IMG/VR virus record: IMGVR_UViG_3300044680_000280
Coordinates: 62,001-126,000 of that record
DNA length: 64,000 nt
Direction: 5' to 3' (one strand)
In this document: piece by piece, positions 1,962 to 21,200 of the stretch
How positions within the stretch are numbered: the first letter of the stretch is position 1
Layout: the number at the start of each line of letters is the position of its first letter
The notes under the pieces: generated by a model
What the model saw: only the letters and a program-made list of their open reading frames with translations
The model's database searches: none
Told to the model about the DNA's origin: nothing
Translations under genes and position numbers: made by a program

Positions 1962-4900
1962 TGATTTGTCACATAATTTCTGGATATGTCTTTGGGACCA
2001 CCAATTTCTGTATCGAAGACCGTGGCGAATCCTGTGACGGTTGACGTGCCATACACTGTTCCCATTAGATTAGAAACGAATTCGACGTTCCCGGTGACGT
2101 CACAGGAACCGTCCGACTCTCCTGCGGCATCGATGGGGATAGCGTAGTCGGCAACGCACTCGGAGTTCGACGTAATGTTGGCACCGACTCCAATTGTGGT
2201 CGTTGCGGACGCGATGATCGTAGAGTTGGCATCGATTGTGGACGTATCGTGACCGTGGACGAAGATCGTGAGGGAATCACTGGTCGAAACCGCATCCGAA
2301 AGGGTCTCGCGATGATTGACGTTAATCGCATAGCTATTGGGCACGCACACGGAGTTGGCGGTGACCGTCGAGGAGACATTGAGAGTCTTAGTACCGTTTG
2401 CAGTGATCGAGGAGTTGGCCGTGACGGTCGCGGTGTCTGTCTTATAGTTGGCACCGATATTGGCTGTAACTGTAGAGTTTGCCGTAATGGCCGATTGACC
2501 GGTTACATTGGTAATAGCTTCAACCGTGAGAGTGGCGTATGCCTCAATGTTGACGTAGCCCGCCGCCTGCTGGTAGATGACATTTCCACCAACGATACAC
2601 CCGGACTCGGAGAAGCCCTGTCCGAATACGGCTCCACCAAGGAGGCCCGTAAGGTAAGAGGTACCGTAGCCAGCCGAGGCAATGCTTTGAACGACCTGTT
2701 CTCTGACCCCAGTGGTCGAAAGACCCGTAACTGCCCCAGAAATGTGATTTGCATATTCCGCATTTCCAGTAATGGTACCGACACCATCGGCTTCACATGG
2801 ATTGTCCCCGTAATACTGATTGCCAGGACCCATTATGGCCGTGGCCATGCCGGTAATAGAACCCGCAATATGGTTGTCAAACTCCGCGTCGCCGGACACG
2901 GTCGCGAACCCGTCCACCGTATTGAGGCTGGGAGCCCAGATCTTCCTGATACCACCATAGAGCTGACCGGTAGCGCCAGAGACGTCGGCTCCCGCATAAA
3001 CCCTGTCGAGGGTCAGAGTTGTGTCGTTCTGGATGGATTCAATGAGATAGTATCCCGATCCGCCTGGGGCTGTGCCGCCGTAGAATTGAAGTATTTCACT
3101 CGCGTATAGTTGGGTCGTGAAGGAAGTTCCGACTCCAGCAACCACTGCGGTCCCATTCGTTAGCGTAAACGTACCCGTGGCAGTCTCATTGAGATTGCTG
3201 AGTTCGGTTACATTGCAGGAGCCAGACGTCGAACCAGAAATGTGATTCGTGTACTCGACATCACCCGTAAGGGTCGACGAACCGCCAGCACCAATATCCC
3301 CACCATCGACGGGGCTAAGGGCAATGATGAGGCCGATGTTAGCCTCAACGTAGGAAAGACCGTACGTAAGACCCTCAATCCAATTGGCGGGTTCAACGAA
3401 GCCCTGGACATAACACTCACCTCGGCACGTAATACCCTGGTAAAGGGAAGCACCAGTCGAGGTCGTTCCCGTGTAGGACGTGCTCAAGGTGAGAGACGTT
3501 TCACTGGAGATTGACTGGATGTAGTAAGTACCTGTTGCAGCCGGCGAACCCTCTCGGAAAGTTAGGGACTGGCCGATGTACAGGTTCAGGAAACTCGTAC
3601 CGGTTCCAGTAACCGTTGCAGAACCATTCGTCAGGGCAACCGTCCCCTCGAGCTTCTGGAACTGCACCGAGATGAGCATCGTCGAGGCGATGAGGTCGAC
3701 GGTTGCGGTCCCGCTAATCGTTTGGAACGGCGCGTACAATGCAGCAACGTTGTCCGAGTCCGTAAGAGTCTCGAAACTATCCGTGAGGGTCTCGTGAACT
3801 CCTCGACTGACCTTGAGCTTGTCGCTCGTTGTCATCGAATCCGAAGCAGACGGATAGTACTTGGCCGTCGCGGAAGCCGTAGTGGTCGCCGAACCATTGA
3901 GACTCGTGGCCCCAGACGCAACAATCACGGTAACCAGGGAGTCCTTGGTGGTCACCGTGTCAGAGACGTTCGCATTCAAAACAACAATCGAACCCGCCTG
4001 ATCCGAAATTGCAATCGTGTCGGAAACCGACTGATGTAGTTCAGCATTGACGTTAGCCGTGACACTAGAGTCAGCCAAAACGGACGAGGTTCCCGTAGCA
4101 TTGATATAGTTCGTCAGGGAGTCGGACGTGGTGGCCGTGTCGGAAACCCCCTCCACCACCGTATGAACAACGGCAAGGGAGTCGGAAACTGTAAAGTCAT
4201 CGGAGACATTTTCGAAGTAGTTCGAGTTCTGACGGGCCGTGAGGGACGAGTCGGCGGTGATCGATGCATTCGCCGTAAAATTGGCGTCCGTCTGAATGGA
4301 GTCACTGATCGAAACAGAATCGGAGAGGTTTTCGTAGATGACAATGACAGCGGTTAGAGAATCCGTGACTGTAATCGTATCCGACGCGTGAATCTCATCG
4401 TCAGCAAGCGGAGATGCCGTGACCGAGGCACTTGCATTTAGAGATGCGGTAACCTCAAAAGATGCCGACGTGTTAAGGCTATCCGTAGGGGTAATCGTAT
4501 CGGACAGTTGCTCGTTAACAACGATGACGGCGACGAGCGAGTCGCTGATCGTAATGGTGTCAGAGAGTCGAGCCTCATCCTCGTCCGTAGCATTTGCTGT
4601 AACCGAGGAACTCGCGGAGAGGGAAGCGTCCGTTCCAAAAGATGCCGAGCTCGAAAGGGAGTCAGAATAGGCGACCGAGTCAGAAAGATTCTCGTAGGCG
4701 ACTATGACTGAACTGAAGGAATCGCTGATTGTAATAGTATCGGAAATGGGCTCGATGTGGTCAGCCGTAATAGCGGCTACGAAGGAGTCCGAGCCGTCAA
4801 GCATCGCTGAGGCTTCGTAAGATGATGTGCCAGTCAAAGAGTCGCTGATCGAGATTGTGTCGGAGATGTTTTGGGTGATGACACTCAGGACTGTCAGGGA

Positions 4901-7900
4901 GTCGGACGTGGTGACCGTATCCGAAAGGCTCTCGCGGAGGTTGGCGGTAGCGCTGGCCGTAACGGTGGAATCCCCATTAATCGAAGACGAGGCAGTGAAG
5001 TTTGCATCCGTGTATAGATAATCAGAGGATGTAATCGTGTCCGACAGAGTCTCATGGAGCACGACGATGGCCGAAGCGGTGTCGGTAATCGAGATTGAAT
5101 CGGAGATATCGACTTCCTCGTACGCATTGGAACTTGCCGTCACCGAAGACGTGCCATTGAGGGAGGCGGCTACAGTGAAGTTCGCATCCGCTGTGAGGGA
5201 ATCGGAGCACCCGATTGTGTCGGACAAGGACTCGTGGAATACAACGATTCCGGTCGCCGAGTCCGTGATCGTGATGACGTCGGATAGATAAACATAGTCA
5301 TCCGCCGTAACGTTTGCTGTCAGGGACGATGAACCGTCGAGGGTCGCGGATGCCGTGAAGCTGGCGTCTGCTGTTAGGCTATCCGAAGTGGTGACCGAAT
5401 CCGAAACGCTCTCATGAAGAACGACGATTCCGGTAACCGAGTCCGTGATCGTGACGGTGTCCGAGAGGTGGATTTCATCGTCTCCCGTTACCGAAGCGGA
5501 CAAGGACGCGGAGCCGTCCAGGGTAGCAGTCGCATGAACGTCGGCACTGGTCTGTAGGAAGTCCGTAAGAGAAATGGTGTCCGACAGGCTTTCGGTAAAG
5601 ACAACAACCGAGCTGACGGAATCCGTGATTGAGATCGTATCGGAGAGGTGAAGTTCGTCCTCTCCAGTGGCATTAGCCGTGACCGAGGAGTCAGCGGAGA
5701 TGGTCGACACCACGAAGTAGGCGGCGTCGGTCTGAAGGGAGTCTGTATAGCTAACCGAGTCCGACAGGTTCTCATTGATTACGATGACCGCGGTTAGGGA
5801 GTCACTGATAGAGATCGTATCGGATAGGTGAAGCTCATCGTCTGCCGTCACGCTCGCGGTGAGCGTAGAACTGGCCGAAATGGCCGAGGCTGCCTCGAAA
5901 GACGCAAAACTGGTAAGAGAGTCCTCGTACGTCGTTGTGTCAGAGACGCTAACAGTAAGAACCACCTGAGCGGTCAGAGAATCGCTACTAGTAATCGAAT
6001 CGGAAATAGTGATGATATGATCGGCTGTGATAGCGGCTACGAAGGAGTCGGAACCATCGAGCATCGCCGAGGCTTCGTAATCCGCAGTGCTCGTCAAGGA
6101 GTCACTGATTGAGACCGAGTCCGACACGCTAACAGTAAGAACCACCTGAGCGGTCAGAGAATCGTAGATGCTGATTGTGTCAGAAACTGACGTGGGGTAA
6201 TTCGAATTCGACCGAGCCGTGATAGACGAGTCCCCATCTATCGATGCGGAGACCGCATGGTTAGCGCTTGTACTGAGGAAGTCCGAAGTGCTGATCGAGT
6301 CAGATAGTGCTTCGTAGGCAACAACGATTGCGGAGACGGAGTCCGTGGCCGAAATCGTGTCCGAGAGGTGGAGTTCATCATCTGCCGTCGCGGCGGCCGT
6401 AAGAGAGGAGCTTCCGTTGAGGTTCGAATGCGCCGTGAAGTTGGCGTCCGTTTGAATCGAATCGGCATAGGTAATCGTATCCGAGGGACTCTCGTACACA
6501 ACGATGACCGCGGTCAGAGAATCGGAGATGCTGATTGTATCAGTGACAGACCCGCTATCGTGAGCCGTAATACTAGCGGAAACCGATGAAGTTCCGTCGA
6601 TGGTCGAGGTTCCCGTATGACTGGCTACGGCCTGAAGAGAATCGGTCGAAGTGATCGTATCCGAGATGTTGGCTTGGATGACGACAACCGCAGTCAGGAT
6701 GTCACTGACCGTAATGGTGTCCGAAAGCGTCTCGACGTGCGAGGCCGTGACGCTAGCAGAAACCGAGGCGTCGGCGTCGATGGTTGAGGTTGCAGTGAAG
6801 TTGGCGTCAGTTTCCAGGGTGTCGGAATAGGTGACAGTGTCCGAAACGTTTGCGTGGACGATGATAACTGACGTTACCGAGTCAGAAATAGACACGGAGT
6901 CAGATACGGAGGCGGCATCGTGGGCTGTGATGCTGGCCGAAACCGAGGAACTCGCCGTGAGGGACGCTTGAACCTGATGGTTCGCATCCGTCTGGAGGGA
7001 ATCCGAAATGGTGACCGTATCGGAAACGTTCTTGTAGATCGTGAGGGTCGTCGACAGGGAGTCCGATATGGTGACAGTATCGGAAAGGCTCTCAACGTGA
7101 TCAGCGGTGATCGCCGCCAAGAGGGAGTCGGTTCCGTCTATGACCGCGAACGCCTGGTAGCTCGCATCCGTGGTCAGAGAATCGGTACAGGTAATCGTAT
7201 CCGAGAGAGAAGGTATACCCGAGAGAACAACGGAAAGTGAATCCGAGAAGGTGACAGTGTCTGAGACAGGGTTTAGGTAATTGGAGTTGCTTCGAGCTGA
7301 GCAGGTCGAGTTCGCCGTCAGTGAGGCGGCCACTTCCCTTATGGCAATGGCAGAGGCCGTGTCTGAGTACGTGATCGTATCTGAAACGTTCGCATTGAGG
7401 ACGACGGTTGCGGTAACCGAGTCCGTGGCACTGACCGTATCAGACAAACTTGCCTTATGCTGAGCAAGGGCCGAAGCGGATACGGATGCAGAACCGCTCA
7501 AACTCGAGGCGGCCGTATGATTGGCGTATGCGGTGAGAGAATCCGTATAGGTAACCGTGTCCGAAACGCTTCGATGAACCGTGGTTATGCACGTGACCGA
7601 ATCAGTAGTCGAGATCGTGTCACTGAGAGATATGACTCGATTCGCTTGAGCCGATAGGGAGTCCGTGGCCGAAATCGTATCGGAAAGGGATTGGATATGA
7701 TTCGCGTCAATGGAAAGAGAATCGGTGACCGAAACCGTGTCGGAGACGCTTACCGACAACACAATGATTGAGGACAGAGAGTCCGAAATTGAGATCGTGT
7801 CTGATAGACTCGGATTGTGTTGCGCGAGAGCTGAAGCCGTGAAAGACGAGCTGGCGGATAGAGAGGAAGCAGCGACCTTATTCGGATGGGCCGTAACAGA

Positions 7901-10078
7901 ATCAGTGCACGTAAGGGTGTCAGCAAGTGGAATACTGTTATTCCTGCCGACTGCCAAGGAATCGGATACCGCAATTGTGTCACTGACCGAGATATGGTGA
8001 CCAGCAGAGGGCGAAAGAGAGTCAGAAATTGTAATCGAGTCGGACGTGCTGATAGCTCCGTACGTCCGTTGTTTCTGAAGTGGTTGTCGACGTCTCGGAA
8101 GCTTTGCGTAGTAGGGAACGGGCGGGTCGGCGCCCTGAGTGGCCGTGTTCGCTGATGTGTTGATATTCGCCGTGGTGGCGGTGGTGCCCGTATAAGGTTG
8201 GGCTAGAGTGAGCTGACCATTTCCCATTGTGTAACCACTATTCGTGGGAACAGTGGTCGTCATGGTCATGGAGGTGGAACTGTTAATTGATGATATCGTA
8301 TACGTGCCAGTTGCCGTCTCGCTCTCATAGTATAGAGTTACGGTTTGACCTGGGAATAGGTGAGTAAAATCCCCAGTATCAACTGCCCCTACGCCCCCGA
8401 CGGTGTTGCTTGCGGTGAGCGTTGTGGTGCCATTCGCATTTATACCGCAACTGCAATTGTAAATGGCTGCAATCGTGTACAACGGAGAAACGGTAACACC
8501 CACGGGACCCAATGGGGTAACGGACACTCCTGAGGTGTTCGCCGAACTGGTGTAATTCGTTGTTAGAGTCAACGAAGTGGTACTAGAGATGCTCTGAATG
8601 ACATAGGTGCCAGATGCGGTAGGGGAGCCCCCGCTAAAAGTTATCGATTGACCCGCAGCAAGATTCGTTGTAAAGCTGGTACTGGTACCAGTAACGGTTG
8701 CAGAACCATTAGTGAGGGCGACCGTACCTGGAATAGTGGATGGGGACCCTTGGTATGGGGTCGTCAAAGTCAGTGCGGTGTTACTCGAAATGGAAGCGAT
8801 GGTGTAAATACCGACCGATAGTAAGGCTCCAATTGTCGTTGCCGAGGCATAGTTCGTTGTTAGTGTCAGAGACGTTGTACTCGCAATAGCCGCGATAACG
8901 TAGGTGCCGGATGCGGTTGACGAGCTACCAGACGAGGCGCCACCACTGAACGTAACCGTCTGTCCTACAACCAAGGTAGTTGTAAAACTAGTGCCAGAGC
9001 CTGTTACTGTAGCCGATCCATTGGTAACAGTGACAGTACCTCCAATGGTACCTGGACCAGTAGAGAAGGAAATGGGTTGCCCGACAGCAAGCAGGGTTGA
9101 AAAACTAGTGCTCGTACCTGTAACTGTCGTTGAGCCATAAGTGAGTGCGGCAGTGCCGGCTATACTAGATTGAGAGGAAAAGGATACGATTTGCCCAGGG
9201 TACAACTGGTTCAAGTAGTTGTAGTTCCACGACAGAATCGTGGTTGGTGCCGTCGGAGTGACCGTGGTTGAACCGTTTGTAACCGAGTTCTGAAGACTTA
9301 CAATTGAGAACCCCGACCCGTTCCCCAAAAGGGTGTACGTAGCGCTAGTTCCAGCAAATGGCCTTAATGCAAATTCAACATTGTAGAAGTTCGGGGCTTG
9401 GTTGTTGAGGTCTGTTTCTCTAGTAAATGGCCAGTATCCGTAAAGGGTATTCAGATTGTCATATGTGGGGGAGAGTTGCTCGGACTCCCTTTCAATGGCC
9501 GCAATCGGCAGAGCCTCCAGCCACATTTTCAGACCAGATATCGAACCTATGAAGGTGTTCTGGAATGTGTTTGTGTACGTGTAGGCGCCGTAGTTGTAAT
9601 TGATACCCAGGCAAAATGTCTGCCCGAGCACTTGTGGGATAGTGGTGTTAGTGTAGTAACTGAGTGAGCTAGTAGGTGTGCCCACAGCCTTCGCAAAAAT
9701 GGTGACAACCGTAGAGGCCGTGTAGGCACTCATCGTCATTCCGACGAAGTACCATTGGTTGTTCTGTAGGGAGACAGTGGATCCGCTTGTAGTGACAACC
9801 GTAGAGGTAGGATCTCCCACCGCTAGAGTGAGCAGACCGGGGGACCCCGCTGCACCCGCGGAACCTTCAATAACTAGAGCGATAGTAGAGCCGCTGGCCG
9901 TCGAGGCCATCTGAAACAAGTAGGCATACGGGGCCCCGCTGCCGTTGTTGTTCAACGACTGAAAGTGCTGCATGTTGATAAACATGCAGATGGTGAAGCC
10001 GTAACCGTTCGAAGAAATGAGCGCGGGAGAGGGGGTCGCTACGAGACCGCCGGCACCTCCTGATAGGTATAAGGACAC
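1958..10078 (-). CDS. Giant fibre/adhesin-like virion protein (2706 aa): N-terminal LamG/ConA-like domain, nested TNGS modules, long Ser/Asp/Thr repeat stalk
   Basis: LamG-type motifs (QWYFVGMT...FIGSISGLKMW...LYGYWP), seven TNGS modules and ~1,400 aa of SDTITISDSL-type repeats; lies in the fibre gene cluster. Confidence 0.75.
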   Translation of the reverse strand: MSLYLSGGAGGLVATPSPALISSNGYGFTICMFINMQHFQSLNNNGSGAPYAYLFQMASTASGSTIALVIEGSAGAAGSPGLLTLAVGDPTSTVVTTSGSTVSLQNNQWYFVGMTMSAYTASTVVTIFAKAVGTPTSSLSYYTNTTIPQVLGQTFCLGINYNYGAYTYTNTFQNTFIGSISGLKMWLEALPIAAIERESEQLSPTYDNLNTLYGYWPFTRETDLNNQAPNFYNVEFALRPFAGTSATYTLLGNGSGFSIVSLQNSVTNGSTTVTPTAPTTILSWNYNYLNQLYPGQIVSFSSQSSIAGTAALTYGSTTVTGTSTSFSTLLAVGQPISFSTGPGTIGGTVTVTNGSATVTGSGTSFTTTLVVGQTVTFSGGASSGSSSTASGTYVIAAIASTTSLTLTTNYASATTIGALLSVGIYTIASISSNTALTLTTPYQGSPSTIPGTVALTNGSATVTGTSTSFTTNLAAGQSITFSGGSPTASGTYVIQSISSTTSLTLTTNYTSSANTSGVSVTPLGPVGVTVSPLYTIAAIYNCSCGINANGTTTLTASNTVGGVGAVDTGDFTHLFPGQTVTLYYESETATGTYTISSINSSTSMTMTTTVPTNSGYTMGNGQLTLAQPYTGTTATTANINTSANTATQGADPPVPYYAKLPRRRQPLQKQRTYGAISTSDSITISDSLSPSAGHHISVSDTIAVSDSLAVGRNNSIPLADTLTCTDSVTAHPNKVAASSLSASSSFTASALAQHNPSLSDTISISDSLSSIIVLSVSVSDTVSVTDSLSIDANHIQSLSDTISATDSLSAQANRVISLSDTISTTDSVTCITTVHRSVSDTVTYTDSLTAYANHTAASSLSGSASVSASALAQHKASLSDTVSATDSVTATVVLNANVSDTITYSDTASAIAIREVAASLTANSTCSARSNSNYLNPVSDTVTFSDSLSVVLSGIPSLSDTITCTDSLTTDASYQAFAVIDGTDSLLAAITADHVESLSDTVTISDSLSTTLTIYKNVSDTVTISDSLQTDANHQVQASLTASSSVSASITAHDAASVSDSVSISDSVTSVIIVHANVSDTVTYSDTLETDANFTATSTIDADASVSASVTASHVETLSDTITVSDILTAVVVIQANISDTITSTDSLQAVASHTGTSTIDGTSSVSASITAHDSGSVTDTISISDSLTAVIVVYESPSDTITYADSIQTDANFTAHSNLNGSSSLTAAATADDELHLSDTISATDSVSAIVVAYEALSDSISTSDFLSTSANHAVSASIDGDSSITARSNSNYPTSVSDTISIYDSLTAQVVLTVSVSDSVSISDSLTSTADYEASAMLDGSDSFVAAITADHIITISDSITSSDSLTAQVVLTVSVSDTTTYEDSLTSFASFEAASAISASSTLTASVTADDELHLSDTISISDSLTAVIVINENLSDSVSYTDSLQTDAAYFVVSTISADSSVTANATGEDELHLSDTISITDSVSSVVVFTESLSDTISLTDFLQTSADVHATATLDGSASLSASVTGDDEIHLSDTVTITDSVTGIVVLHESVSDSVTTSDSLTADASFTASATLDGSSSLTANVTADDYVYLSDVITITDSATGIVVFHESLSDTIGCSDSLTADANFTVAASLNGTSSVTASSNAYEEVDISDSISITDTASAIVVLHETLSDTITSSDYLYTDANFTASSSINGDSTVTASATANLRESLSDTVTTSDSLTVLSVITQNISDTISISDSLTGTSSYEASAMLDGSDSFVAAITADHIEPISDTITISDSFSSVIVAYENLSDSVAYSDSLSSSASFGTDASLSASSSVTANATDEDEARLSDTITISDSLVAVIVVNEQLSDTITPTDSLNTSASFEVTASLNASASVTASPLADDEIHASDTITVTDSLTAVIVIYENLSDSVSISDSIQTDANFTANASITADSSLTARQNSNYFENVSDDFTVSDSLAVVHTVVEGVSDTATTSDSLTNYINATGTSSVLADSSVTANVNAELHQSVSDTIAISDQAGSIVVLNANVSDTVTTKDSLVTVIVASGATSLNGSATTTASATAKYYPSASDSMTTSDKLKVSRGVHETLTDSFETLTDSDNVAALYAPFQTISGTATVDLIASTMLISVQFQKLEGTVALTNGSATVTGTGTSFLNLYIGQSLTFREGSPAATGTYYIQSISSETSLTLSTSYTGTTSTGASLYQGITCRGECYVQGFVEPANWIEGLTYGLSYVEANIGLIIALSPVDGGDIGAGGSSTLTGDVEYTNHISGSTSGSCNVTELSNLNETATGTFTLTNGTAVVAGVGTSFTTQLYASEILQFYGGTAPGGSGYYLIESIQNDTTLTLDRVYAGADVSGATGQLYGGIRKIWAPSLNTVDGFATVSGDAEFDNHIAGSITGMATAIMGPGNQYYGDNPCEADGVGTITGNAEYANHISGAVTGLSTTGVREQVVQSIASAGYGTSYLTGLLGGAVFGQGFSESGCIVGGNVIYQQAAGYVNIEAYATLTVEAITNVTGQSAITANSTVTANIGANYKTDTATVTANSSITANGTKTLNVSSTVTANSVCVPNSYAINVNHRETLSDAVSTSDSLTIFVHGHDTSTIDANSTIIASATTTIGVGANITSNSECVADYAIPIDAAGESDGSCDVTGNVEFVSNLMGTVYGTSTVTGFATVFDTEIGGPKDISRNYVTNQ
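3745..8055 (-). repeat. Coding tandem repeat: ~20-aa units arranged in a 60-aa (180-nt) super-repeat
   Basis: Two SDxxxxSDSL units alternate with one LxGSSSxxA unit. A 39-nt identical DNA stretch occurs at 5946-5984 and 6126-6164, exactly 180 nt apart. Confidence 0.9.
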
Positions 10079-10098: not shown

Positions 10099-11904
10099 TT
10101 ATGCAACCTGACGCTTGATGCCTTGCCACGTGTGACCAAAGGCCGGGGTCTCCAAGTACAAAGACGTCGTAGTCGAAGTCGTTCCCGTGTAATTGGACGC
10201 CAAGGTCAACGAGGTGCCGCTTCCAATTGCTGAAATGGTGTACGGGACTCCGGGCTGAGAAGCAAAGGAGATGACTTGCCCAACGGTAAGTTGTAGAAAG
10301 CTCGACGTAGCAGTTGTAACTGTCGCGGACCCGTTCGTCACATTGACGTTAGTCAGGCTGTCAAATGCACTAGTCAGTAGGGCGACTCCGCTTCGGTTCT
10401 CAACGATGATGACTATGTGATCGGGAAGGGAACCACTGAAAGCGGACGCGACACTGAAGGGGGAGCTAAACTTGCTGACGTACCCTGTTAGGGTCGTACC
10501 GGTACTTGTTGCTCCAGTATAGGGAGAGGTCATCGTCAGAGTGGGATTGCCCGTCAAAGTCACTGACCCCGAGCCAGAGTTATTTGCATTAGTAGTTAGC
10601 GTTAGCGAAGTATTGCTGGTGATCGTCGCAATGACATATGTGCCCGTCGGAGGAGTGGTTCCACCTGAAAATGTAACTGCCTGGCCAGGAACGAACTGGG
10701 TCAAAAAGCTTGTGGAGGTTCCCGTAACGGTTGAAGAACCGCTCGTAGTGGCGACTGTACCACTACCCGTAACGCTGCTACCAATGGCCAAAACCATGTA
10801 TGGGACACCGGCTTGACTCGCGAGAGTTATGGTTTCACCCACAGCAGCAGTAAAGGCCGTCGCGCTAGAGAGGACGGAGTATCCGTTCGTAGCATAAACC
10901 GTTGTGCTTCCACCTGGAGCCGTGGCAGCGGACGTGCCGACGTTCATTGTACCTATGAGTCGGGCATTCGGAGGAGATGTCAAGGTCACAGGAGCGGAAA
11001 CCCCGGTTACCTCTTCACCGTAAGTCAATCCGCCGTCCGATGTGCCCGTCGCGTATACGTTAATGATCGACGGTGCGACAGGAGTTGTATTCGTGGTGGC
11101 TTTGACTTGGACGAAAATGTCCTCGAACTCATTGAGAAATGAGTACATAGACAGTGAGTTTGAAGTCGTGCCTGAGTAAGTGGTGGTCAGACTCAAGGAG
11201 TACGCACTTGCGATAGAAGCTATCGTGTAGGTAGTCCCCAGAGACCCTGCAAACTGTACAACCTGATTGACGTACAAGGTGGAGTTGAAATACGTTCCTC
11301 CGTTGGTGTACAAGGTGGCGCTCGACGACGTCGCACCACTGTAAAAACCCGTCAGAGTGAGAGTCGTATTGGTAATACTGGAGATCGTGTAATTCACCCC
11401 GGGTTGCGAGCTGAAACTGATCAATTGACCGATGCTCAACGGAAGGTAGGTGAAGCTGGCCCCAGACGTCCCCGTGCCCGTATAGTTCGTGGTTAGGGTC
11501 AAGGAGGTGTTGTTTGTGATCGACCCAATGACGTAGGTCCCCGTTGCCGTACCACCACCGAACGTGATCATCTGACCCACGGACAACTGAGTCAGGAAGC
11601 TCGTGCTAGACCCTGTCACGGTTGCAGAGGCGTTCGTGACAGTTACGGTCCCCGTTCCTGTGTATCCCGTAAGGCTCGTGGTGACGCTCGTCGAACCATT
11701 CGTCACCGTCACCGTGCCAGAAATGGAAGCCATCGAGACGGCCGTCGAACCATTCGTCACCGAGACAGATCCAGGAAGCAGAACTATCCCGTTCGCCGTG
11801 TTGTCGATGTACGAAGAGGCTGTCGCGGACGTTGAGCCCAGGTTCGCCAGAGCCATCGGCAAGGGCTGAGCCGGTGCCGCGTAATTGGACGAAACTATGC
11901 TCAT
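10099..11904 (-). CDS. Virion/fibre-associated protein (601 aa): small core inflated by six TNGS modules; paralog of 13015-15333
   Basis: Shares core segments with the 772-aa ORF (SATASSYIDNTAN, FEDIxVQ, DGGxTYGE, PPNARL, LPDHIV, ENRSG, HTWQG). Confidence 0.75.
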   Translation of the reverse strand: MSIVSSNYAAPAQPLPMALANLGSTSATASSYIDNTANGIVLLPGSVSVTNGSTAVSMASISGTVTVTNGSTSVTTSLTGYTGTGTVTVTNASATVTGSSTSFLTQLSVGQMITFGGGTATGTYVIGSITNNTSLTLTTNYTGTGTSGASFTYLPLSIGQLISFSSQPGVNYTISSITNTTLTLTGFYSGATSSSATLYTNGGTYFNSTLYVNQVVQFAGSLGTTYTIASIASAYSLSLTTTYSGTTSNSLSMYSFLNEFEDIFVQVKATTNTTPVAPSIINVYATGTSDGGLTYGEEVTGVSAPVTLTSPPNARLIGTMNVGTSAATAPGGSTTVYATNGYSVLSSATAFTAAVGETITLASQAGVPYMVLAIGSSVTGSGTVATTSGSSTVTGTSTSFLTQFVPGQAVTFSGGTTPPTGTYVIATITSNTSLTLTTNANNSGSGSVTLTGNPTLTMTSPYTGATSTGTTLTGYVSKFSSPFSVASAFSGSLPDHIVIIVENRSGVALLTSAFDSLTNVNVTNGSATVTTATSSFLQLTVGQVISFASQPGVPYTISAIGSGTSLTLASNYTGTTSTTTSLYLETPAFGHTWQGIKRQVA

Positions 11905-11947
11905 GGGGTGCCTAATCCCGTGAGCTAAAAGAAGAAAGTGGCCTCAG
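11905..11947 (-). promoter_or_regulatory. Duplicated leader/promoter segment upstream of the 601-aa gene
   Basis: CTGAGGCCACTTTCTTCTTTTAGCTCACGGGATTAGGCACCCC-ATG is nearly identical to the leader of the paralog at 15334-15375. Confidence 0.55.
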
Positions 11948-12000
11948 GAAAGAGTCCCCGCAAGACCAATTTCCAAGGGTTCCCCACAATTTTTGGGGAA

Positions 12001-12219
12001 CTAACCTTTGGCCGTTTCTTTGACTGGAACGATGGCTACCACTCGAAAGAGGTAGGGAGCCGCAAGCGGGGCGCCAGCAAGACCGGCCGCGAACTTCTCT
12101 GCGGCGGACGCGGTAAAGGGACCGTGGTGAATGTCCACGAGGCAGATAACCTTCTCCTCGGTTCCATCTTCACTCCGAACAGTGGCTTTTCCGTGTAGGT
12201 TCTCTTTTACATTGACCAT
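12001..12219 (-). CDS. Small hypothetical protein (72 aa)
   Basis: ORF track gives 12001-12234. The ATG at 12219 is preferred because GGAGG lies about 8 nt upstream. Confidence 0.6.
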   Translation of the reverse strand: MVNVKENLHGKATVRSEDGTEEKVICLVDIHHGPFTASAAEKFAAGLAGAPLAAPYLFRVVAIVPVKETAKG

Positions 12220-12266
12220 TTTGGTGTCCTCCATAGGAACAGGAATCCTAGCATAAATGGCTCACG

Positions 12267-13013
12267 TTATGCAGTGAATCCATAACGTGTGGTGACGTAG
12301 CTCTTCCAAGCGGAGCGCACTGTAGAGCCGACGGATCCGTTGTAAAAGGCCAACTCGTAAATCTTCCCACCAAATTGAATGGAGCCTGCCCCGTTACCCA
12401 CTACAATGCCGGTTCCGCCCGCAGGTACGTTACCACCGCCCCCAGAGGAGGCAGTGGTGCTGTTCGTGGTAGTGGAAACATATGAAAATGCAGAGGTGGT
12501 AGAAAAAAGGCAATCGATAAGGTACGAATTTCCAGTTGCGACCGTAACCTGATTTATGAAGCTAGTACTAGTTCTCTGACCAATCTCAGTGGCAGTTCCC
12601 ATACGAATAGCCGGGTACCCTGCGCCAGAATTGGTTAGGTCGATCAACCATGCCGTAGAATCCGAGGTAGTATACTGAACCACCATGAAAACTTCGTATG
12701 GATTGCCTAGGTTCAAAGTCTGACTTGACGAAAGGAAGTACCCCCCTATGGTCGAGAAGTCAATATACGGACAACCATTGAGACCTCCAGTAGTCTTGTA
12801 CCCGGGCCTATTTCCAGGCGTTGCTTGAGTCAATGTTTGACTGTTGGCCAAACCCAATTGGTCCACCCACTCAGAGACGTTATTGCTTGAGTCTGTAGTG
12901 ACGCCTAAGTCACTACGAAACCAAGAAACGCAAGTCGGACTGGTGGTGCCCGTGGCAATAACGGGAAATATGTTTATCGGTGCTGGAGCGCCTGCTCCCA
13001 ATGCGAAAGGCAT
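12267..13013 (-). CDS. LamG/ConA-like beta-sandwich virion protein (248 aa)
   Basis: WFRSDLGV...VSEWVDQ...LTQAT..NRP, FGGKIYELAFYN and YVTTRYG are typical of phage LamG-like fibre domains. Confidence 0.7.
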   Translation of the reverse strand: MPFALGAGAPAPINIFPVIATGTTSPTCVSWFRSDLGVTTDSSNNVSEWVDQLGLANSQTLTQATPGNRPGYKTTGGLNGCPYIDFSTIGGYFLSSSQTLNLGNPYEVFMVVQYTTSDSTAWLIDLTNSGAGYPAIRMGTATEIGQRTSTSFINQVTVATGNSYLIDCLFSTTSAFSYVSTTTNSTTASSGGGGNVPAGGTGIVVGNGAGSIQFGGKIYELAFYNGSVGSTVRSAWKSYVTTRYGFTA

Positions 13014-13014
13014 C

Positions 13015-15333
13015 TTAGGCCACCACCTTCTGCGTAACGTCGATAGACCAGTGGATCGTCGTCGACGCCAAACCCGTAACCGAGATTTGCAAGGTGTTCG
13101 TGCTGAGAGCGACCGAGGAGTTCATAGAGCTACCTGAACCGTTCGTGAGGATATTGTAGGCCGCGGGAGTCGAAGGGTTCAGAGTGGCGGCGGAGGACCC
13201 CGCTCGTTGAACCAGGAACTCGTAGTCGGCGCTATAGAGGTCTCCCGCTCCGCCCGTGTCTACCCCTAGAACGTTGACAATGAAGCGACTGGCGGAGCTT
13301 GCAGCCATCGCAATCGACACGGCCGTCGTGGACGTGGAGTTTGTGGTCGTCTGGGAGTAGATGATCGAGTTGACGGGATTTGTACCGCTAGAGTTCAGGA
13401 CCGTCTCGGTTGCCGTGATGGGAATCGAAGAGGCGCCGCTGATCGAATTGACCGTTCCAGTAACTGACCCGGGTCCCGTTGCCGTGACGTCTCCCGTAAT
13501 GGCCGTGATGGCCGAGGTGGAACTCGATTCCAATGGGTCGACGAATTGGCGTTTGGTGCCTTGCCATGTGTGCGTGAATGCCTCGATGTAAATAGAAGCA
13601 GTCGAAGCCCCGGCACCCGTATAGTTCGTGGTCAAAGTCAACGAGGTCCCACTAACCGAGGAAACGGTATAGGGAACTCCCAACTGGGAGCTGAACGAGA
13701 TCATTTGACCGGGGGTCAGGAAGGAGGCCAGAGTCGCGCTCGCCGTGACAAGGTTCGTTCCTGGAGTTAGAGCCGCGGTCGGGGTGATCGCCGTATTGAA
13801 AAGAGTCTGTCCGCTCCTGTTTTCGGCAATGAGGACAATATGGTCAGGGAGAGTTCCCCCATATGCCGCTGCAATGCTGAAAGGAAGACTGAATTTGTTG
13901 ACGTAAGCGGTAAGAGCTCCCGTGGTCGTAGTCGTACCCGTGAAGGGGGTGTTCAAAACGAACGTCGGTTGACCTGTCATGGTCGCTGAGCCCGTCCCAA
14001 CCCCAGTAGCCGTGTTGATAGTCAGAGAGGTATTACTGGCGATGGCCGTAATGACGTACGGCACGGTACCAGTCAGGTAGGTAGACTGGATGACTACCTG
14101 TCCAACAGAGAAGGTGGTCGTAAACGTCGTGCCAGACCCCGTCACCGTCGTGGTGCCGTTGAATGTTACCGTAGCCGAGGATTGAGTCGTGGCCGGTATC
14201 GCGATGATCGTGTACGGGACTCCCACCTGACCCGTGCTGAACGTCACCGTCATTCCAACTAGCAAGCTAGAAATGGTGGTAGACGTGCCAGAAACAATGG
14301 AGGAACCGTTCGTAGCGGTAAGAGTGGAACCACCAATGTTGGACGATGGAGCGGCCGTAGTACCTAGATTGATGATTCCAACGAGTCTAGCGTTTGGCGG
14401 GGCCGTCAAAGTAACTGGACCTGAAACCCCGTTAACCTGCTCACCGTACGTGGTACCGCCATCGGTCGACCCCGTGGCGTAAATGTTTAGGATAGCTGGA
14501 GCTGTTGGAGTGCTGGAAACCGTAACCCTAAACTGAACCAGAATGTCCTCGAACTGATTGAGCAACGAGTACATTTGGAGTCCGCCCGCTGTCATTGTCG
14601 CGTTTACCGACGTCGTGGATCCCGTGTAAACGGATCCAAGGGTGAGGGACGTAGAGCTTTGAATCGAAGAAATGTAGTACGTACCCGAAGCCGTCGGAGT
14701 ACCGCCACTGAACGTGACGTACTGACCCGCGTAGAAGCTTGTAAAACCGGTTCCCGTAACCGTAACGGACCCGTTCGTAAGGGCAACGGATGCCGTAGCC
14801 CCCGTCGAGTTCCCCGTGTAGTTGCTCGTCAGAGTCATGACATATGGGCTCGTGATCGAGGAGACCACGTACGACGTACCCAACGTGCCCGCGAACTGAA
14901 CCGACTGACTCTGGTACAGAGCCGAATTGAAGTACATACCCCCGTTCGTGTACAGGGTTGCGGTCGAGGATGTTGCGCCGCCGTAATTACCCAAGAGAAG
15001 CAACAGAGTGGTGCTAAAAACCTCAAGAATCGTGTAGCTCACACCAGGCTGGGAACTGAAACTAATGACCTGGCCCGCGCTTAAGGGCGTGAAGTTTGCC
15101 GTGCCCGCCGTAACGATCTGCGATCCCTGGGTCACCGTGACGGTTCCCGAGATTGACGCCATTGTGACGGTTGCGGAACCGTTCGTGAGGAGAACCGTTC
15201 CAGGGAACAATAAAGACCCGTTCGCCGTGTTGTCGATGTAGCTCGACGCCGTGGCCGAGGCACTGGTAAGGCCCGCCAGGGACATACCCAAAAGCTGATT
15301 GGGCGAGGAGTAGATAGGCGAAAGAGTGCTCAT
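13015..15333 (-). CDS. Virion/fibre-associated protein (772 aa): paralog of the 601-aa protein with six TNGS modules and a C-terminal domain shared with the 2178-aa fibre
   Basis: Core identity with 10099-11904. The last ~165 aa closely match the C-terminus of 18206-24742. Confidence 0.75.
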   Translation of the reverse strand: MSTLSPIYSSPNQLLGMSLAGLTSASATASSYIDNTANGSLLFPGTVLLTNGSATVTMASISGTVTVTQGSQIVTAGTANFTPLSAGQVISFSSQPGVSYTILEVFSTTLLLLLGNYGGATSSTATLYTNGGMYFNSALYQSQSVQFAGTLGTSYVVSSITSPYVMTLTSNYTGNSTGATASVALTNGSVTVTGTGFTSFYAGQYVTFSGGTPTASGTYYISSIQSSTSLTLGSVYTGSTTSVNATMTAGGLQMYSLLNQFEDILVQFRVTVSSTPTAPAILNIYATGSTDGGTTYGEQVNGVSGPVTLTAPPNARLVGIINLGTTAAPSSNIGGSTLTATNGSSIVSGTSTTISSLLVGMTVTFSTGQVGVPYTIIAIPATTQSSATVTFNGTTTVTGSGTTFTTTFSVGQVVIQSTYLTGTVPYVITAIASNTSLTINTATGVGTGSATMTGQPTFVLNTPFTGTTTTTGALTAYVNKFSLPFSIAAAYGGTLPDHIVLIAENRSGQTLFNTAITPTAALTPGTNLVTASATLASFLTPGQMISFSSQLGVPYTVSSVSGTSLTLTTNYTGAGASTASIYIEAFTHTWQGTKRQFVDPLESSSTSAITAITGDVTATGPGSVTGTVNSISGASSIPITATETVLNSSGTNPVNSIIYSQTTTNSTSTTAVSIAMAASSASRFIVNVLGVDTGGAGDLYSADYEFLVQRAGSSAATLNPSTPAAYNILTNGSGSSMNSSVALSTNTLQISVTGLASTTIHWSIDVTQKVVA

Positions 15334-15461: not shown

Positions 15462-15845
15462 CTATGCCTCAGTGACGGTCAATTGTCCTGCTGGGAATTT
15501 GATTTGGTCGTTCATATTGACAACGCGGGAAGTCGTCAACGAGCCGAAATAAAGCATGTTGCCAGTGTTTGGGTCATCGAGAATGGCGAAGGCGACAACA
15601 GTACCCCAAGACGACGTCGCAATGGGGTATGTGATGTCCAGAGTATTTGACACGGCACCCGCTACGGGAGCACTGAAGCTCGCGGCCTGTCTCGTGTAAC
15701 TGCCCCCGCTGACCTCCGTGCCAGTCGTTGTGGGAGTCGGAGAACCGGTGTACAGAGCCACGTATACGGTCGTCGGGGAGCTGTACGCGGTGTTTCGCAA
15801 TGCAGCGTTCAGCACGGCAGTTTCGAAGTACTGAGTCTTGGGCAT
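15462..15845 (-). CDS. Conserved small phage tail/fibre-associated protein (127 aa)
   Basis: Pattern VYVALYT..P....EVSGGSYxRQ...SN...xYP.AT..WGTV..FAI.D...GN.L.xG.L is a family common in phage tail regions (recognised by eye). Confidence 0.7.
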   Translation of the reverse strand: MPKTQYFETAVLNAALRNTAYSSPTTVYVALYTGSPTPTTTGTEVSGGSYTRQAASFSAPVAGAVSNTLDITYPIATSSWGTVVAFAILDDPNTGNMLYFGSLTTSRVVNMNDQIKFPAGQLTVTEA

Positions 15846-18205: not shown

Positions 18206-21200
18206 CTAGCTTATCACCTTCTGCGTGACATCGATCGACCAATCAATTGTAGTCGAAGACAGTCCAGTAACCCCCACTCTGAAAGTGTTTCCAAGCAGAG
18301 AAACGCTAGAGCTCATGGAGCTGCCCGAACCGTTCGTGAGAATGTTGTACGGAGCTGGAGTTGTGGGATTCAAAACGGCCGAAGAAGAACCGGCCCTCTG
18401 AACGACGCACTCGTAATCCGCGGAGTACATATCCCCTGCCCCGCCCGTATCTACACCAAGAACATTAATGGTGAAGCGGCTAACCGTGGCTGGAGGGAAG
18501 GTGCCGATAGAGTATGGGTACACCGTAGTTGCGTTGGTCGTTGTGTATGTGGTGACGATCGCACTGATGGGTGCCGTGGGAGTACCAGAAGAGTTGAGTG
18601 TCGTCTCCGTGGCCGTGATGTTGATGGGAGACGACCCGCTAATCGAGTTGACCGTCGCCGCAGCGGAACCTGGCCCTGAGGCTGTAACGTCCCCAGTAAG
18701 AGCCGTGATCGCTGGAGCGGTTGTGGTGACCCAACCTTGACCCGTACTGATGATGTTAGACGCAGAACCGCTAATGATCGATACGGTGGCGCCCGTGAGA
18801 GCCCCACCGTAGGAGCTTGAGCCGCCGACCGTAATGGTGTTACCAGTATTGTTGATGATGGTTTTCTGGTAGCCTTTGGTCACAAACGGAAGAACAACCG
18901 TCGTAATGGTTGGACCAGCGATTGCGATGGTTCCGTACATGAAACTCGTTGAATCAACCCAATACGTTGTGGCCGACCCACTATAAAGCTGCTTGTAGTA
19001 GGTGTCGTAGCAAGGGATTCGCACGCACGCCGTATTGTTCGAATCGACGAACGTTGCATTCACCTGAGTGAACACCCCACCCGCGGTCGGAGCAAAGAGA
19101 ATCTGATTAGGGACATTCCACCAAACGGGAGGCTGTGTATTTCCGATTAGGTAAGCCGACCCGTTGGGAAACGGCACATCTCCATTATTCGCAATTTGAG
19201 AAGGGTAGAAGCTCAAAAGGGGCTGGGAAACGAGAGGAGTAGAACTCGCGGTGTACGTAGGACCCAAACCGTTGTAGTTGAAATTCAGGTACTGGAGAGA
19301 ATAAACGGTTCCGGCAACATAGGATCCGTCCCCAGAAACCGGCATCCACGAGATTCCGCCTCCAACAGCGATAGGAGTTCCGGGAGTAAACGTAACAGCA
19401 GAGGAGTCCGGTGGAGAGAAAGTGCCCGTCCCCAGGACATAGGTCGTAGAGGAGACAATTCGGATGAAACAATTTTGAACGGAAGCCGACACAGTCACAT
19501 TGAGGCCAGAGGATGCCGCATAGGTCGTGCCAGTGTAGTTCGTTTGCAAGATGATATGGGCACTCGTAACTGAGGATACGAGGTAAATAGTACCGCTCGT
19601 ATCTGACGAGAAGGTAACAGCATCACCAGCAATCAGGGTACTGACCTGAGAAGAAGTCGTTGGCACAGTGGACGAGCCGTTGGTAATGGCAAACGTACCA
19701 CTCAAAGACGTTCCTGGAACGTAGAAGTATGCGGCCGGAGGGGGAGTGGTGGACCCGTCAGGACAAAGAATGGTGGTATTTCCAACGGACGGAACAACGA
19801 TACCCGTGTTGGGAACAGGGAATATCGCACTGTACGTGTTCCCACCGTCCGGGCTGTACTGGGCTTGTAGGGAAAGACCAGGGAACCCAGTCGTAGTGAT
19901 CTTAACCGCAGGTAGAACAGATGCGGTATTGAAGCTGCTTGCCAGATAAATTGGAGTGCTGGATCCGCCAATTGCGTACCCTGCCGTAATAAGGCACGAG
20001 TCGTTGGTCAGAGACCACGGTCCGCATACGATGACACCCTGACCGCCGTAATCGTTTACGGTTCCAGACCCGTTGTAAAGGGAGAGCTGGGCGGTTCGGT
20101 TGTACGAAATGTTGAGCAAGCGAATGACAGTGTCGAGCAAACCGCCGCCCTCGTTCGTTGCTCCGAGGTCGAAGATTTGAACCGCACAGTCTGGCTCAGC
20201 GAGTAGAAGGACATCTCCAAGCGTGTTCGCGCATCCCTCGATGAGAGGATCGGTCACCATCCAGCCCGACCCGCCGAGGATCAAGGCGTATGACATGTTC
20301 CCGCCGTAGACGAACTGGATGTGCTCAATAGCGTTTTGGTTGGACGCCCCAACTCCGCAAAAGCCGTAGCTCTCCGAAGTGTAATAACCATGAGAGCCCG
20401 TTAGGAAGGCGTTGCCTCCGAAGACAAAGATTTGCCTGTAAGTGCATTCATAGCAGTTGTTGACCCAGGTTCCGCCGATCGTCCCTTGGAGCCAGAGTCG
20501 TTCGTACTTGTTGAACGGAGCGAGTTGGCTGTAGTAAGCCATTCCCGTCTGGTACTTCTGGAGAGCCAAGTCGTGAATATGATTCCACGTGGCACCTTGA
20601 GAGTCGTTGACCGAAGAGTTCCAACGGTTCCAAACGGACATGGTCTTCTGCGAGACCCCGTTCCCTTGAAGAATGCCGATTCGGATGTCGTTGAGATACG
20701 TCGACGTTCCCGTGACGAACAAGTCCCTCTGAATGTTTGAGGGGTCGAAGTTGAGGAGATAGATCGTATGGGCGTCCGTCGAGAGTTCCGCCGTTGGGGG
20801 CGTGAAGTTCGTCGTGTATTCCTGCGTTGCGGAAATACGGAGTCCCCCAAAGTACCCGTCGAAGTTCTCTCCGACAAGTTCCCCCCAGTAGCCAGTTCCA
20901 GGCTTGATATAGCCCGAGAACATGCAGCCCATCGTGAGCTGCTCGGTTATGTTCTGGACCAAAGTTCCAGTAATCGCCGTCTTTAGAGTCGTATCCTCGA
21001 CGCCGTTGACGAACCAGTGGAGATATCCGTCCGCTCCCCAACTCATCGCAATGTGCGTGATGGTTCGAAGAGGGATCTGGATCCCTGAGGTCAGGGATCC
21101 GTTGAATTGTGGGTACGCGGGACCGCTCGGGAAGCTATAGAGATTTGACGTCGTCGCGATGTCTCCCGCGAGGTACCCATCACTCATACCGAACGAAACA

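What the first reader, a model, noticed from the sequence alone, without database searches (positions are those of the whole stretch)
10099..15333. Paralog pair showing different filled and empty insertion sites
Seen: the 601- and 772-aa genes share a short core and five module positions, but each has one private copy. The 601-aa protein has an extra module at ~11446-11670 inside its second module, where the paralog reads VTAGTANFTPLSAGQ uninterrupted. The 772-aa protein has an extra module at ~14587-14802 in the tail of its first module, where the paralog reads YSGTTSNSLSMYS. Inference: gains (or precise losses) continued after the gene duplication. This is the best internal evidence for mobility.
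Basis: seen in the sequence. Interest (0 to 1): 0.78.

Follow-up and report, generated by a model that had tools for sequence, protein, structure and literature searches.

The report
Extra barrel domains gained by phage paralogs
Two old duplicate genes of a 407-kb peat phage encode a jelly-roll virion protein whose loops carry small beta-barrel domains, and each duplicate later gained one more barrel at a different spot: ordinary domain duplication and insertion, not an active mobile element.

Summary
The 601-aa and 772-aa proteins are paralogs, 58% identical. They differ by two clean 72-aa indels. Each indel is one complete copy of a ~65-aa module. In the 601-aa protein the copy sits inside another module, whose two halves are split around it. 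In the 772-aa protein the copy is added in phase at the end of a module array.

The only relative found is P0001, a 538-aa protein from another phage contig. It lacks both copies at the same sites. In that part of the gene it behaves as the outgroup, so two gains are the most economical history.

The predicted uninterrupted core exists. Dozens of ~160-aa proteins form a confident 8-strand jelly roll. In this lineage modules fill three of its loops.

The module is homologous to the N-terminal OB-like anchor domain of the solved F2-pyocin side fibre. It also occurs in fibre, sheath and baseplate proteins of other phages.

"Mobility" holds only in the evolutionary sense:
- Synonymous sites are saturated.
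- No donor can be identified.
- No terminal repeats, target duplications or enzymes are seen.
- No empty-site contigs occur in three metagenomes.

I read this as domain accretion by duplication and recombination in a virion-surface protein. It is a new variant of a known kind and of moderate interest.

The parts
10099..11904 (-). 601-aa paralog: jelly-roll core split into four pieces, with module arrays in three loops
   Evidence: ORF. Alignment with the uninterrupted cores is A4. In the AF2 model the core pieces have pLDDT above 90.
13015..15333 (-). 772-aa paralog: same core and five shared module positions, plus a private module and an extra C-terminal domain
11443..11658 (-). Private module of the 601-aa protein (residues 83-154): a complete SGG-type copy nested inside another module
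   Evidence: 72-aa gap. Profile match 1-70 with E 4e-29.
11659..11718 (-). N-terminal hairpin of the host module (residues 63-82), cut off from its body by the nested copy
   Evidence: Module profile positions 1-22. Two strands are predicted at 65-68 and 73-76.
11308..11442 (-). Body of the host module (residues 155-199), which resumes after the nested copy
   Evidence: Module profile positions 16-67. It is contiguous with the hairpin in the 772-aa protein and in P0001.
15079..15096 (-). Empty site in the 772-aa protein (residues 80-85, NFT|PLS) matching the nested insertion in the 601-aa protein
14593..14808 (-). Private module of the 772-aa protein (residues 176-247): a complete SGG-type copy added in phase between module 3 and the core
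   Evidence: 72-aa gap. Profile E 3e-27. Placement is ambiguous over about 25 residues.
11155..11178 (-). Empty site in the 601-aa protein (residues 243-250, YSGTTSNS) matching the private module of the 772-aa protein
11788..11904 (-). Core piece N of the 601-aa protein (residues 1-39, strands 1-2 of the jelly roll)
   Evidence: Aligns with residues 1-38 of the small cores.
10912..11148 (-). Core piece C1 of the 601-aa protein (residues 253-331, strands 3-5)
   Evidence: phmmer finds this piece only in the two paralogs within the genome.
10360..10494 (-). Core piece C2 of the 601-aa protein (residues 471-515, strands 6-7)
10102..10146 (-). Core piece C3 of the 601-aa protein (residues 587-601, strand 8)
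13018..13521 (-). C-terminal domain present only in the 772-aa paralog and shared with the end of the 2178-aa neighbour
   Evidence: 68% identity over 168 aa. Absent from the 601-aa protein and from P0001.
8525..8731 (-).
   Evidence: Among the best relatives of both private copies, but only 70-71% amino-acid identity over the module core (52-61% over the BLAST alignments) and 0.19-0.32 third-codon identity.

Best explanation
The two genes are anciently diverged paralogs of a virion-surface protein. They lie in the fibre and baseplate block of a 407-kb phage from peat.

Architecture:
- The scaffold is a ~160-aa eight-strand jelly roll of the TNF/C1q-like or carbohydrate-binding-module kind. 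In most relatives it is an uninterrupted small protein or a C-terminal knob.
- In this lineage three loops of the jelly roll (strands 2-3, 5-6 and 7-8) carry arrays of a ~65-72-aa small beta-barrel module.
- The module is homologous to the N-terminal OB-like anchor domain of the F2-pyocin side fibre.

What changed after the paralogs' N-terminal regions last shared an ancestor:
- The 601-aa protein gained one more module of the 'SGG' subtype, in the loop after the first hairpin of an existing module. This is a domain nested within a domain.
- The 772-aa protein gained one more 'SGG' module in phase at the end of its first array.
- The 772-aa protein also acquired a C-terminal domain shared with the 2178-aa neighbour.

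Inferred mechanism: occasional in-frame duplication or ectopic recombination of module-coding DNA, from the same gene or from neighbouring fibre genes. Copies survive because the module folds on its own and tolerates being placed in surface loops. Selection for more binding or spacer units on the virion surface would favour retention.

What is shown: the anatomy, the homologies and the polarity. What is inferred: the recombination mechanism and the adhesive or anchoring role.
For: - Two exact 72-aa indels that are whole modules.
- Outgroup P0001 lacks both. It comes from a different phage contig with the same gene order.
- Around the indels the 601- and 772-aa proteins are sisters (supports 95 and 100).
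- Seventy or more uninterrupted ~160-aa cores align cleanly with the four core pieces. The core model has pLDDT 97. It is a jelly roll nearest to XepA, TNF/C1q knobs and CBMs, and to uncharacterised phage proteins at TM 0.82.
- A different lineage, P0014, has one module in a fourth loop.
- The module profile hits solved PyoF13 residues 7-70 at E 4e-12, and a 'distal tail protein gp20' at E 1e-12. PMC13455828 describes the PyoF13 domain as an OB domain that anchors the fibre.
- The module occurs 36 times in 11 ORFs of this genome. It also occurs in sheath and gpI-like proteins elsewhere.
- Nested arrays and module-count differences are also seen between the 2706-aa protein and its ortholog.
- A separate C-terminal domain was swapped between neighbours.
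- Saturated synonymous sites and the absence of long DNA repeats show the events are old.
Against: - There is only one outgroup, so polarity rests on parsimony with three sequences.
- The gene's history is mosaic: the C-terminal half groups the 772-aa protein with P0001. The rooting therefore holds only region by region.
- In-phase loss of the tandem copy by unequal crossing-over is mechanistically easy.
- Module parts of the full-length model are low confidence (pLDDT 50-75). That the split host module still folds around its guest is therefore not shown.
- No direct evidence locates the protein in the virion or shows what the modules bind.
Confidence: 0.75

Rival explanations
1. Reciprocal precise loss. 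The ancestor of the paralogs carried both extra modules. Each paralog then deleted a different one, and the P0001 lineage lost both.
For: - The private copy of the 772-aa protein lies in phase next to a similar module, so unequal crossing-over could remove exactly one unit.
- There is only one outgroup.
- The history is mosaic.
Against: - It needs at least two independent deletions per site, against one gain each.
- The nested copy has no similar sequences at its two junctions that could drive a precise excision.
- The general trend in this genome compared with its relative is more modules, not fewer.
Confidence: 0.12
2. The module is a selfish, self-propagating in-frame insertion cassette, analogous to inteins or homing cassettes. 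It would have a dedicated insertion mechanism that is still active in this phage lineage.
For: - Many copies in many genes of one genome.
- Insertions at several loop sites, including inside other copies.
- The same module occurs in unrelated virion proteins of other phages.
Against: - No near-identical DNA copies. Third-codon identity is at chance level. The longest shared DNA is a 56-nt stretch at 84% between two copies of one gene.
- No terminal repeats or target duplications.
- No intein or endonuclease family hits in the proteins.
- The filled state is fixed in three metagenomes.
- The module is a bona fide structural domain of solved fibre proteins.
- An unrelated domain was also shuffled.
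Confidence: 0.04
3. Alignment artefact. The proteins are low-complexity and Thr/Ser/Gly-rich, so the 72-aa gaps would be arbitrary placements in repetitive sequence rather than discrete events.
For: - Composition is strongly biased.
- The placement of gap 2 can slide by about 25 residues.
Against: - The same two gaps appear in the pairwise alignment, the three-way alignment and the 57-sequence alignment.
- Gap 1 has a sharp optimum.
- The inserts match a module profile built largely from other proteins end to end.
- The lengths differ by exactly 72 aa at each site.
Confidence: 0.02

Closest known systems
N-terminal OB-like domain of the F2-pyocin side fibre PyoF13 (PDB 25ve; PMC13455828), and the N-terminal domain of 'distal tail protein gp20' (PDB 23gd)
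   Same: Sequence-homologous ~65-aa small beta-barrel: profile E 4e-12 and 1e-12, covering profile positions 2-67. It is found in tail-fibre-type proteins.
   Different: In those proteins it is a single N-terminal copy that anchors the fibre to the tail. Here there are six or seven copies per protein, placed inside loops of a jelly-roll core and inside each other. An anchoring role here is untested.
Ig-like accessory domains on phage structural proteins (Fraser et al. 2006, J Mol Biol, 'a tale of promiscuity and deceit'; cited from my own knowledge)
   Same: A small autonomous beta domain added to many unrelated virion proteins (fibres, sheath, baseplate). Copy number varies between close relatives, and the role is presumed to be weak surface binding.
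   Different: A different fold and family: no Ig, FN3 or BIG2 hits. Here insertion is mostly internal, into loops, and recursive, rather than terminal or by frameshift.
Duplication of a small domain in the T4 gp37 tail-fibre adhesin (Tetart et al. 1996, J Mol Biol; cited from my own knowledge)
   Same: Fibre proteins gain extra copies of a small domain by recombination between short conserved motifs.
   Different: The T4 events are recent, tandem and visible in DNA. Here the events are ancient, one is nested, and no DNA homology is left.
Insertion domains in jelly-roll or HK97 capsid proteins (birnavirus VP2 projection domain, P22 coat I-domain; cited from my own knowledge)
   Same: A conserved core fold that tolerates a whole domain in a surface loop. 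Birnavirus VP2 chains top the Foldseek list for the full-length model, but with no statistical weight: TM 0.05-0.08, probability 0.03-0.06.
   Different: In those proteins one fixed insertion is present. Here three loops are filled with arrays of one repeated module, and occupancy varies between paralogs and orthologs.
E1 FCCH-like barrel on siphophage tail-tube proteins (PMC13576161)
   Same: A small six-stranded barrel that faces outward on a tail protein. The language-model search placed such clusters among the neighbours at score 0.84.
   Different: No detectable sequence match to PF16190 in any of the 110 module copies. This is a lead only.
Inteins and homing cassettes
   Same: An in-frame insertion of a self-contained unit inside a host protein or domain.
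   Different: No Hint or endonuclease signatures, no DNA-level identity between copies, and the insert remains part of the mature protein fold family.

Membership tests
PyoF13-type small beta-barrel (OB-like) fibre domain | Significant sequence homology to the solved domain over its full length | tested here: met
   The profile of 110 copies hits 25ve_A residues 7-70 at E 4e-12 and 23gd_B residues 4-69 at E 1e-12.
PyoF13-type small beta-barrel (OB-like) fibre domain | Small closed beta-barrel fold | tested here: inconclusive
   The AF2 model gives hairpin, short helix, then three or four strands per module, but at pLDDT 50-75. Local Foldseek matches are to 75-80-aa barrels of ATP synthase N-domains, at probability 0.97-0.99.
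PyoF13-type small beta-barrel (OB-like) fibre domain | Acts as the attachment point of a fibre to the tail | not testable with these tools
   Described for PyoF13 in PMC13455828. There are no virion data for this phage.
Active mobile element (in-frame insertion cassette) | Near-identical DNA copies at different sites | tested here: not met
   Best nucleotide identity between copies is 0.66. Third-codon identity is 0.19-0.45. The longest repeat is 56 nt at 84%.
Active mobile element (in-frame insertion cassette) | Defined termini: inverted or direct repeats, or target-site duplication | tested here: not met
   The junction codons show no duplication. No such repeats were found.
Active mobile element (in-frame insertion cassette) | Presence/absence polymorphism in populations | tested here: inconclusive
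   Contigs of three peat runs all carry the filled sites, and no joints skip them. However, contigs drop rare variants.
Intein | Hint-domain blocks and splice-junction residues, often with a homing endonuclease | tested here: not met
   No Pfam hit of that kind in either protein or in any of the 110 module copies. The inserts are homologs of a structural fibre domain.
Ig-like phage decoration domains | Ig, FN3 or BIG2 sequence family | tested here: not met
   No such Pfam matches.
E1_FCCH (PF16190) | A match to the Pfam model | tested here: not met
   None of the 110 copies matches at E up to 1. The only support is a feature-space neighbour at 0.84.
TNF/C1q-like or CBM-like jelly-roll knob (for the core) | Eight-strand jelly-roll fold | tested here: met
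   The AF2 model has pLDDT 97 and eight strands. VIA Z is 10.5 to XepA and 7-8 to C1q, TNF, BclA, CBMs and Bdellovibrio fibre knobs.
TNF/C1q-like or CBM-like jelly-roll knob (for the core) | Trimeric assembly or sugar binding | not testable with these tools
   No multimer model or assay is available. There are no Pfam, PHROG or NCBIfam hits for the core.

The most novel reading that the evidence does not exclude
The module is more than a passively duplicated domain. It would be a coding cassette with a dedicated, possibly phage-encoded, way of copying itself in frame into surface loops, including loops of its own copies. That would explain why one jumbo phage carries 36 copies in 11 virion genes with Russian-doll nesting. 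The events seen here would be old traces of a process that still runs in the lineage.
Probability: 0.04. Interest if true: 0.85.

Novelty: new variant of a known kind. Interest (0 to 1): 0.4.

Why it matters
This locus gives a polarised natural example of recursive domain insertion. One small barrel domain colonises three loops of a jelly-roll core. It also colonises loops of its own copies. Filled and empty sites are preserved side by side in paralogs and in an ortholog.

It also flags two widespread but uncatalogued phage protein families:
- a ~160-aa jelly-roll 'knob', with 70 or more clusters at 50% identity and no Pfam, PHROG or NCBIfam model;
- a ~65-aa fibre barrel domain that has recently solved structures but no Pfam model.

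For protein engineers, the permissive sites mapped here indicate where this scaffold accepts whole-domain insertions. For phage biology, it suggests how very large phages build multivalent surface proteins.

It does not reveal a new kind of mobile element.

Tried and rejected
- DNA search of the region against 50,697 phage records: no match.
- Scans of viral and metagenome contigs: these returned only the window's own virus (L003) and copies of the single relative (L004, L005).
- Word-indexed protein search and the exhaustive profile search: only one full-length outgroup found.
- Pfam, PHROGs and NCBIfam: no model for the core. No Pfam or NCBIfam model for the module. PHROGs only shows that the module matches the N-termini of tail-fibre families.
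- The E1_FCCH lead from the language-model search: not confirmed by sequence.
- hmmalign of the long proteins to the core profile: failed across the large inserts. It was replaced by the MAFFT alignment A4, which is clean.
- Donor identification by BLAST and by a maximum-likelihood tree of 41 module copies: unresolved. Support within the SGG group is 10-77.
- Tandem Repeats Finder: nothing.
- Full-length AF2 model: modules are too uncertain to judge how the split host module packs. Coordinates could not be inspected.
- Laying public runs on the region: only assembler contigs were available. They are identical and show no empty-site form. The two 'joints' listed there are weak 41-42-nt cross-matches between the paralogs, not deletions.
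- A target-site-duplication reading of the 'GYT ... SFT' junction residues: rejected. 'S-[LF]-[YT]' is the normal tail of the module, and the codons differ.


Full report
**Setting.** The window is bases 62001-126000 of a single 406,734-bp contig that the tools treat as a virus record. Identical DNA is present in peat metagenome runs and on an IMG/VR contig. All large genes near the finding lie on the minus strand. They belong to a virion block that includes:
- a Baseplate_J protein (24770-28246);
- a gp80-like fibre protein (15462-15845);
- giant Thr/Ser-rich proteins of 2178 and 2706 aa.

**The observation.** The 601-aa (10099-11904) and 772-aa (13015-15333) proteins align at 58% amino-acid identity and about 60% nucleotide identity.
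- Apart from 1-3-residue gaps, there are two internal gaps of exactly 72 aa each.
- There is also a ~170-aa C-terminal extension in the 772-aa protein.

Gap 1 is residues 83-154 of the 601-aa protein (window 11443-11658). Sliding a 72-aa deletion along the sequence gives a single optimum there, with a short plateau for starts at 76-83.

Gap 2 is residues 176-247 of the 772-aa protein (window 14593-14808). Its placement can slide by about 25 residues, because the insert is in phase with the preceding module.

**The inserts are whole modules.** A profile seeded from five copies (the two private copies among them) scores each private copy end to end, at domain E-values 4e-29 and 3e-27.

A second profile, built from 110 copies (the two private copies among them, but most from other proteins), parses the 601-aa region as follows:
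- module positions 1-22, the host hairpin;
- a full copy, positions 1-66;
- module positions 16-67, the rest of the host.

So the copy in the 601-aa protein sits inside another module, just after its first hairpin. The copy in the 772-aa protein is added in phase between the last module of the first array and the core. Both proteins otherwise share five module positions.

**The core.** An exhaustive profile search of 1.84 billion representative proteins found 520 hits.
- Dozens are proteins of 155-165 aa that match only the non-module parts.
- Fifty-three of them align cleanly with four pieces of the 601-aa protein: residues 1-39, 253-331, 471-515 and 587-601.

Their AF2 model is an eight-strand jelly roll at pLDDT 97.
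- Its nearest solved neighbours are PBSX XepA (Z 10.5), then TNF/C1q-type knobs, BclA, Bdellovibrio fibre tips and carbohydrate-binding modules at Z 7-8.
- Its nearest predicted viral structures are uncharacterised phage proteins, at TM 0.82.
- No Pfam, PHROG or NCBIfam model covers it.

In longer relatives the core sits at the C-terminus, like a fibre knob.

Modules therefore fill three loops of the core in the 601-aa protein, the 772-aa protein and P0001: between strands 2-3, 5-6 and 7-8. Of 78 core-family representatives only these proteins, P0014 and one other are interrupted. P0014 carries a single module in a fourth loop. On its contig it lies next to a major-capsid gene and a gp80-like gene.

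**The module.**
- It has no Pfam model.
- It matches the N-termini of PHROG tail-fibre families.
- Its profile hits two solved chains: F2-pyocin side fibre PyoF13 residues 7-70 (E 4e-12), and a 'distal tail protein gp20' residues 4-69 (E 1e-12).
- The PyoF13 paper describes that domain as an OB domain that forms a ring and anchors the side fibre to the central fibre (PMC13455828).

In the full-length AF2 model each module shows a hairpin, a short helix and three or four strands, but only at pLDDT 50-75. Local structural matches are to small barrels such as ATP-synthase N-domains.

A language-model neighbour search suggested E1 FCCH-like barrels. Such barrels decorate some siphophage tail tubes (PMC13576161). 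No sequence match to that Pfam family was found.

The module occurs 36 times in 11 ORFs of this genome. Elsewhere it occurs in a tail-sheath protein, a P2 gpI-like protein and many large surface proteins.

**Polarity.** Only one independent full-length relative exists in the databases searched: P0001, 538 aa, 47-62% identical.
- It lies on a 13.9-kb contig of a related phage with the same gene order.
- That contig carries a single core-family gene.
- This genome has exactly two core-family genes.
- P0001 lacks both private copies at precisely the same sites.

The gene history is mosaic.
- Over the first ~230 alignment columns, where both indels lie, the 601- and 772-aa proteins are most alike: 0.62-0.70, against 0.48-0.62 to P0001.
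- Over the C-terminal part the 772-aa protein and P0001 are most alike: 0.70-0.76.

A tree of 41 module copies, rooted by the other positions, agrees.
- Module 3 groups the 601- and 772-aa copies at support 95, with P0001 outside at support 100.
- The loop-2 and loop-3 modules group the 772-aa protein with P0001, at supports 100 and 99.

Under either reading, one gain per private copy is more economical than two precise losses. For the nested copy there are no similar junction sequences that could drive a precise excision. With only one outgroup, this remains a parsimony argument.

**Age and donors.** At fourfold-degenerate codons with identical amino acids, the paralogs share the third base in 26% of cases, against 29% expected from codon usage. 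Between module copies third-codon identity is 0.19-0.45. The longest DNA repeat among modules is 56 nt at 84%, between two copies within the 2706-aa gene. Tandem Repeats Finder sees nothing. The events are therefore old.

Both private copies belong to an 'SGG' subtype. That subtype also includes modules of the adjacent 2706-aa gene and the loop-2 module of this gene family.
- The best relatives of the 601-aa private copy are 2706-aa residues ~437-523 (88 bits) and its own loop-2 module (87 bits).
- The tree does not resolve a donor.

**Is it mobile?** The junction codons show no target duplication. The apparent 'GYT ... SFT' echo is simply the normal tail of a module. No intein or endonuclease signature is present. 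Contigs from three peat metagenomes all carry the filled sites, although contigs cannot exclude rare variants.

The 772-aa protein has also acquired a 168-aa C-terminal domain that is 68% identical to the end of the 2178-aa neighbour.

The 2706-aa protein shows deeper nesting: partial, partial, full, partial, full in the profile parse. It has several more modules than its 1176-aa ortholog on the related contig.

Together this indicates long-running domain shuffling and accretion among neighbouring virion genes. It does not indicate a module-specific transposition system.

**Conclusion.** The finding is real and its polarity inference is supported. The best explanation is ancient, selection-filtered, in-frame duplication and insertion of an autonomous small barrel domain into permissive surface loops of a jelly-roll virion protein and of other copies of itself.

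It works like the promiscuous Ig-like decoration domains of phages and like the small-domain duplications of T4 gp37 (both cited from my own knowledge). It differs from them by using another fold and by inserting internally and recursively.

I rate it a new variant of a known kind, with interest 0.4. I give a 4% chance that a dedicated copying mechanism lies behind it.

Noticed in passing
window 1958-10078 (-), especially 8100-9300: The N-terminal region of the 2706-aa protein holds modules nested like Russian dolls: two N-terminal module halves, a full copy, a C-terminal half, then another full copy. Its 1176-aa ortholog on L001 has far fewer modules.
   Followed up: partly
window ~3900-7900 (-): The centre of the 2706-aa gene consists of about 20 diverged repeats with a 180-nt (60-aa) period, rich in 'SDT.S.SDS' motifs. 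They are found as repeat families with spacings that are multiples of 60 or 180 nt, but are too diverged for Tandem Repeats Finder.
   Followed up: no
window 13018-13521 (-) and 18206-18712 (-): The last 168 aa of the 772-aa protein are 68% identical to the C-terminus of the 2178-aa protein. This domain is absent from the 601-aa paralog and from the outgroup. It has no Pfam hit.
   Followed up: partly
window 10099-15333; L001:2439-4055: Mosaic relatedness. The N-terminal part of the 601-aa protein is closest to the 772-aa protein. The C-terminal part of the 772-aa protein is closest to the outgroup P0001. This suggests old gene conversion or recombination between the paralogs.
   Followed up: partly
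L007:3630-4352: A 240-aa member of the core family from an unrelated contig carries a single module in a different loop (between strands 4 and 5). It lies beside a major-capsid gene and a gp80-like gene.
   Followed up: partly
proteins P0004, P0005, P0043, P0066 (other metagenomes): The same module is inserted twice in a tail-sheath protein. It also appears in a P2 gpI-like baseplate protein and in two ~350-aa proteins of unknown role. This shows it is a widespread accessory domain without a Pfam model.
   Followed up: partly
window 11905-13013: Between the paralogs lie a 248-aa ORF (12267-13013) with no family hit and a 362-bp gap holding a 77-aa ORF (12001-12234). Neither has a counterpart next to the single gene on the related contig.
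   Followed up: no
window 18206-24742 (-): The 2178-aa protein contains a run of ~95-aa repeats ('ITGLTGD.TA.GPG ...') as well as three copies of the module. It has no Pfam hit.
   Followed up: no
whole genome (G000, 406,734 bp): This is a single-contig virus of jumbo size from peat. The stretch 10099-15333 is identical in two peat metagenome runs, and short identical pieces of it occur in a third. An IMG/VR contig of 156 kb encodes the same 601-aa protein. No match was found in the collection of deposited phage genomes.
   Followed up: partly
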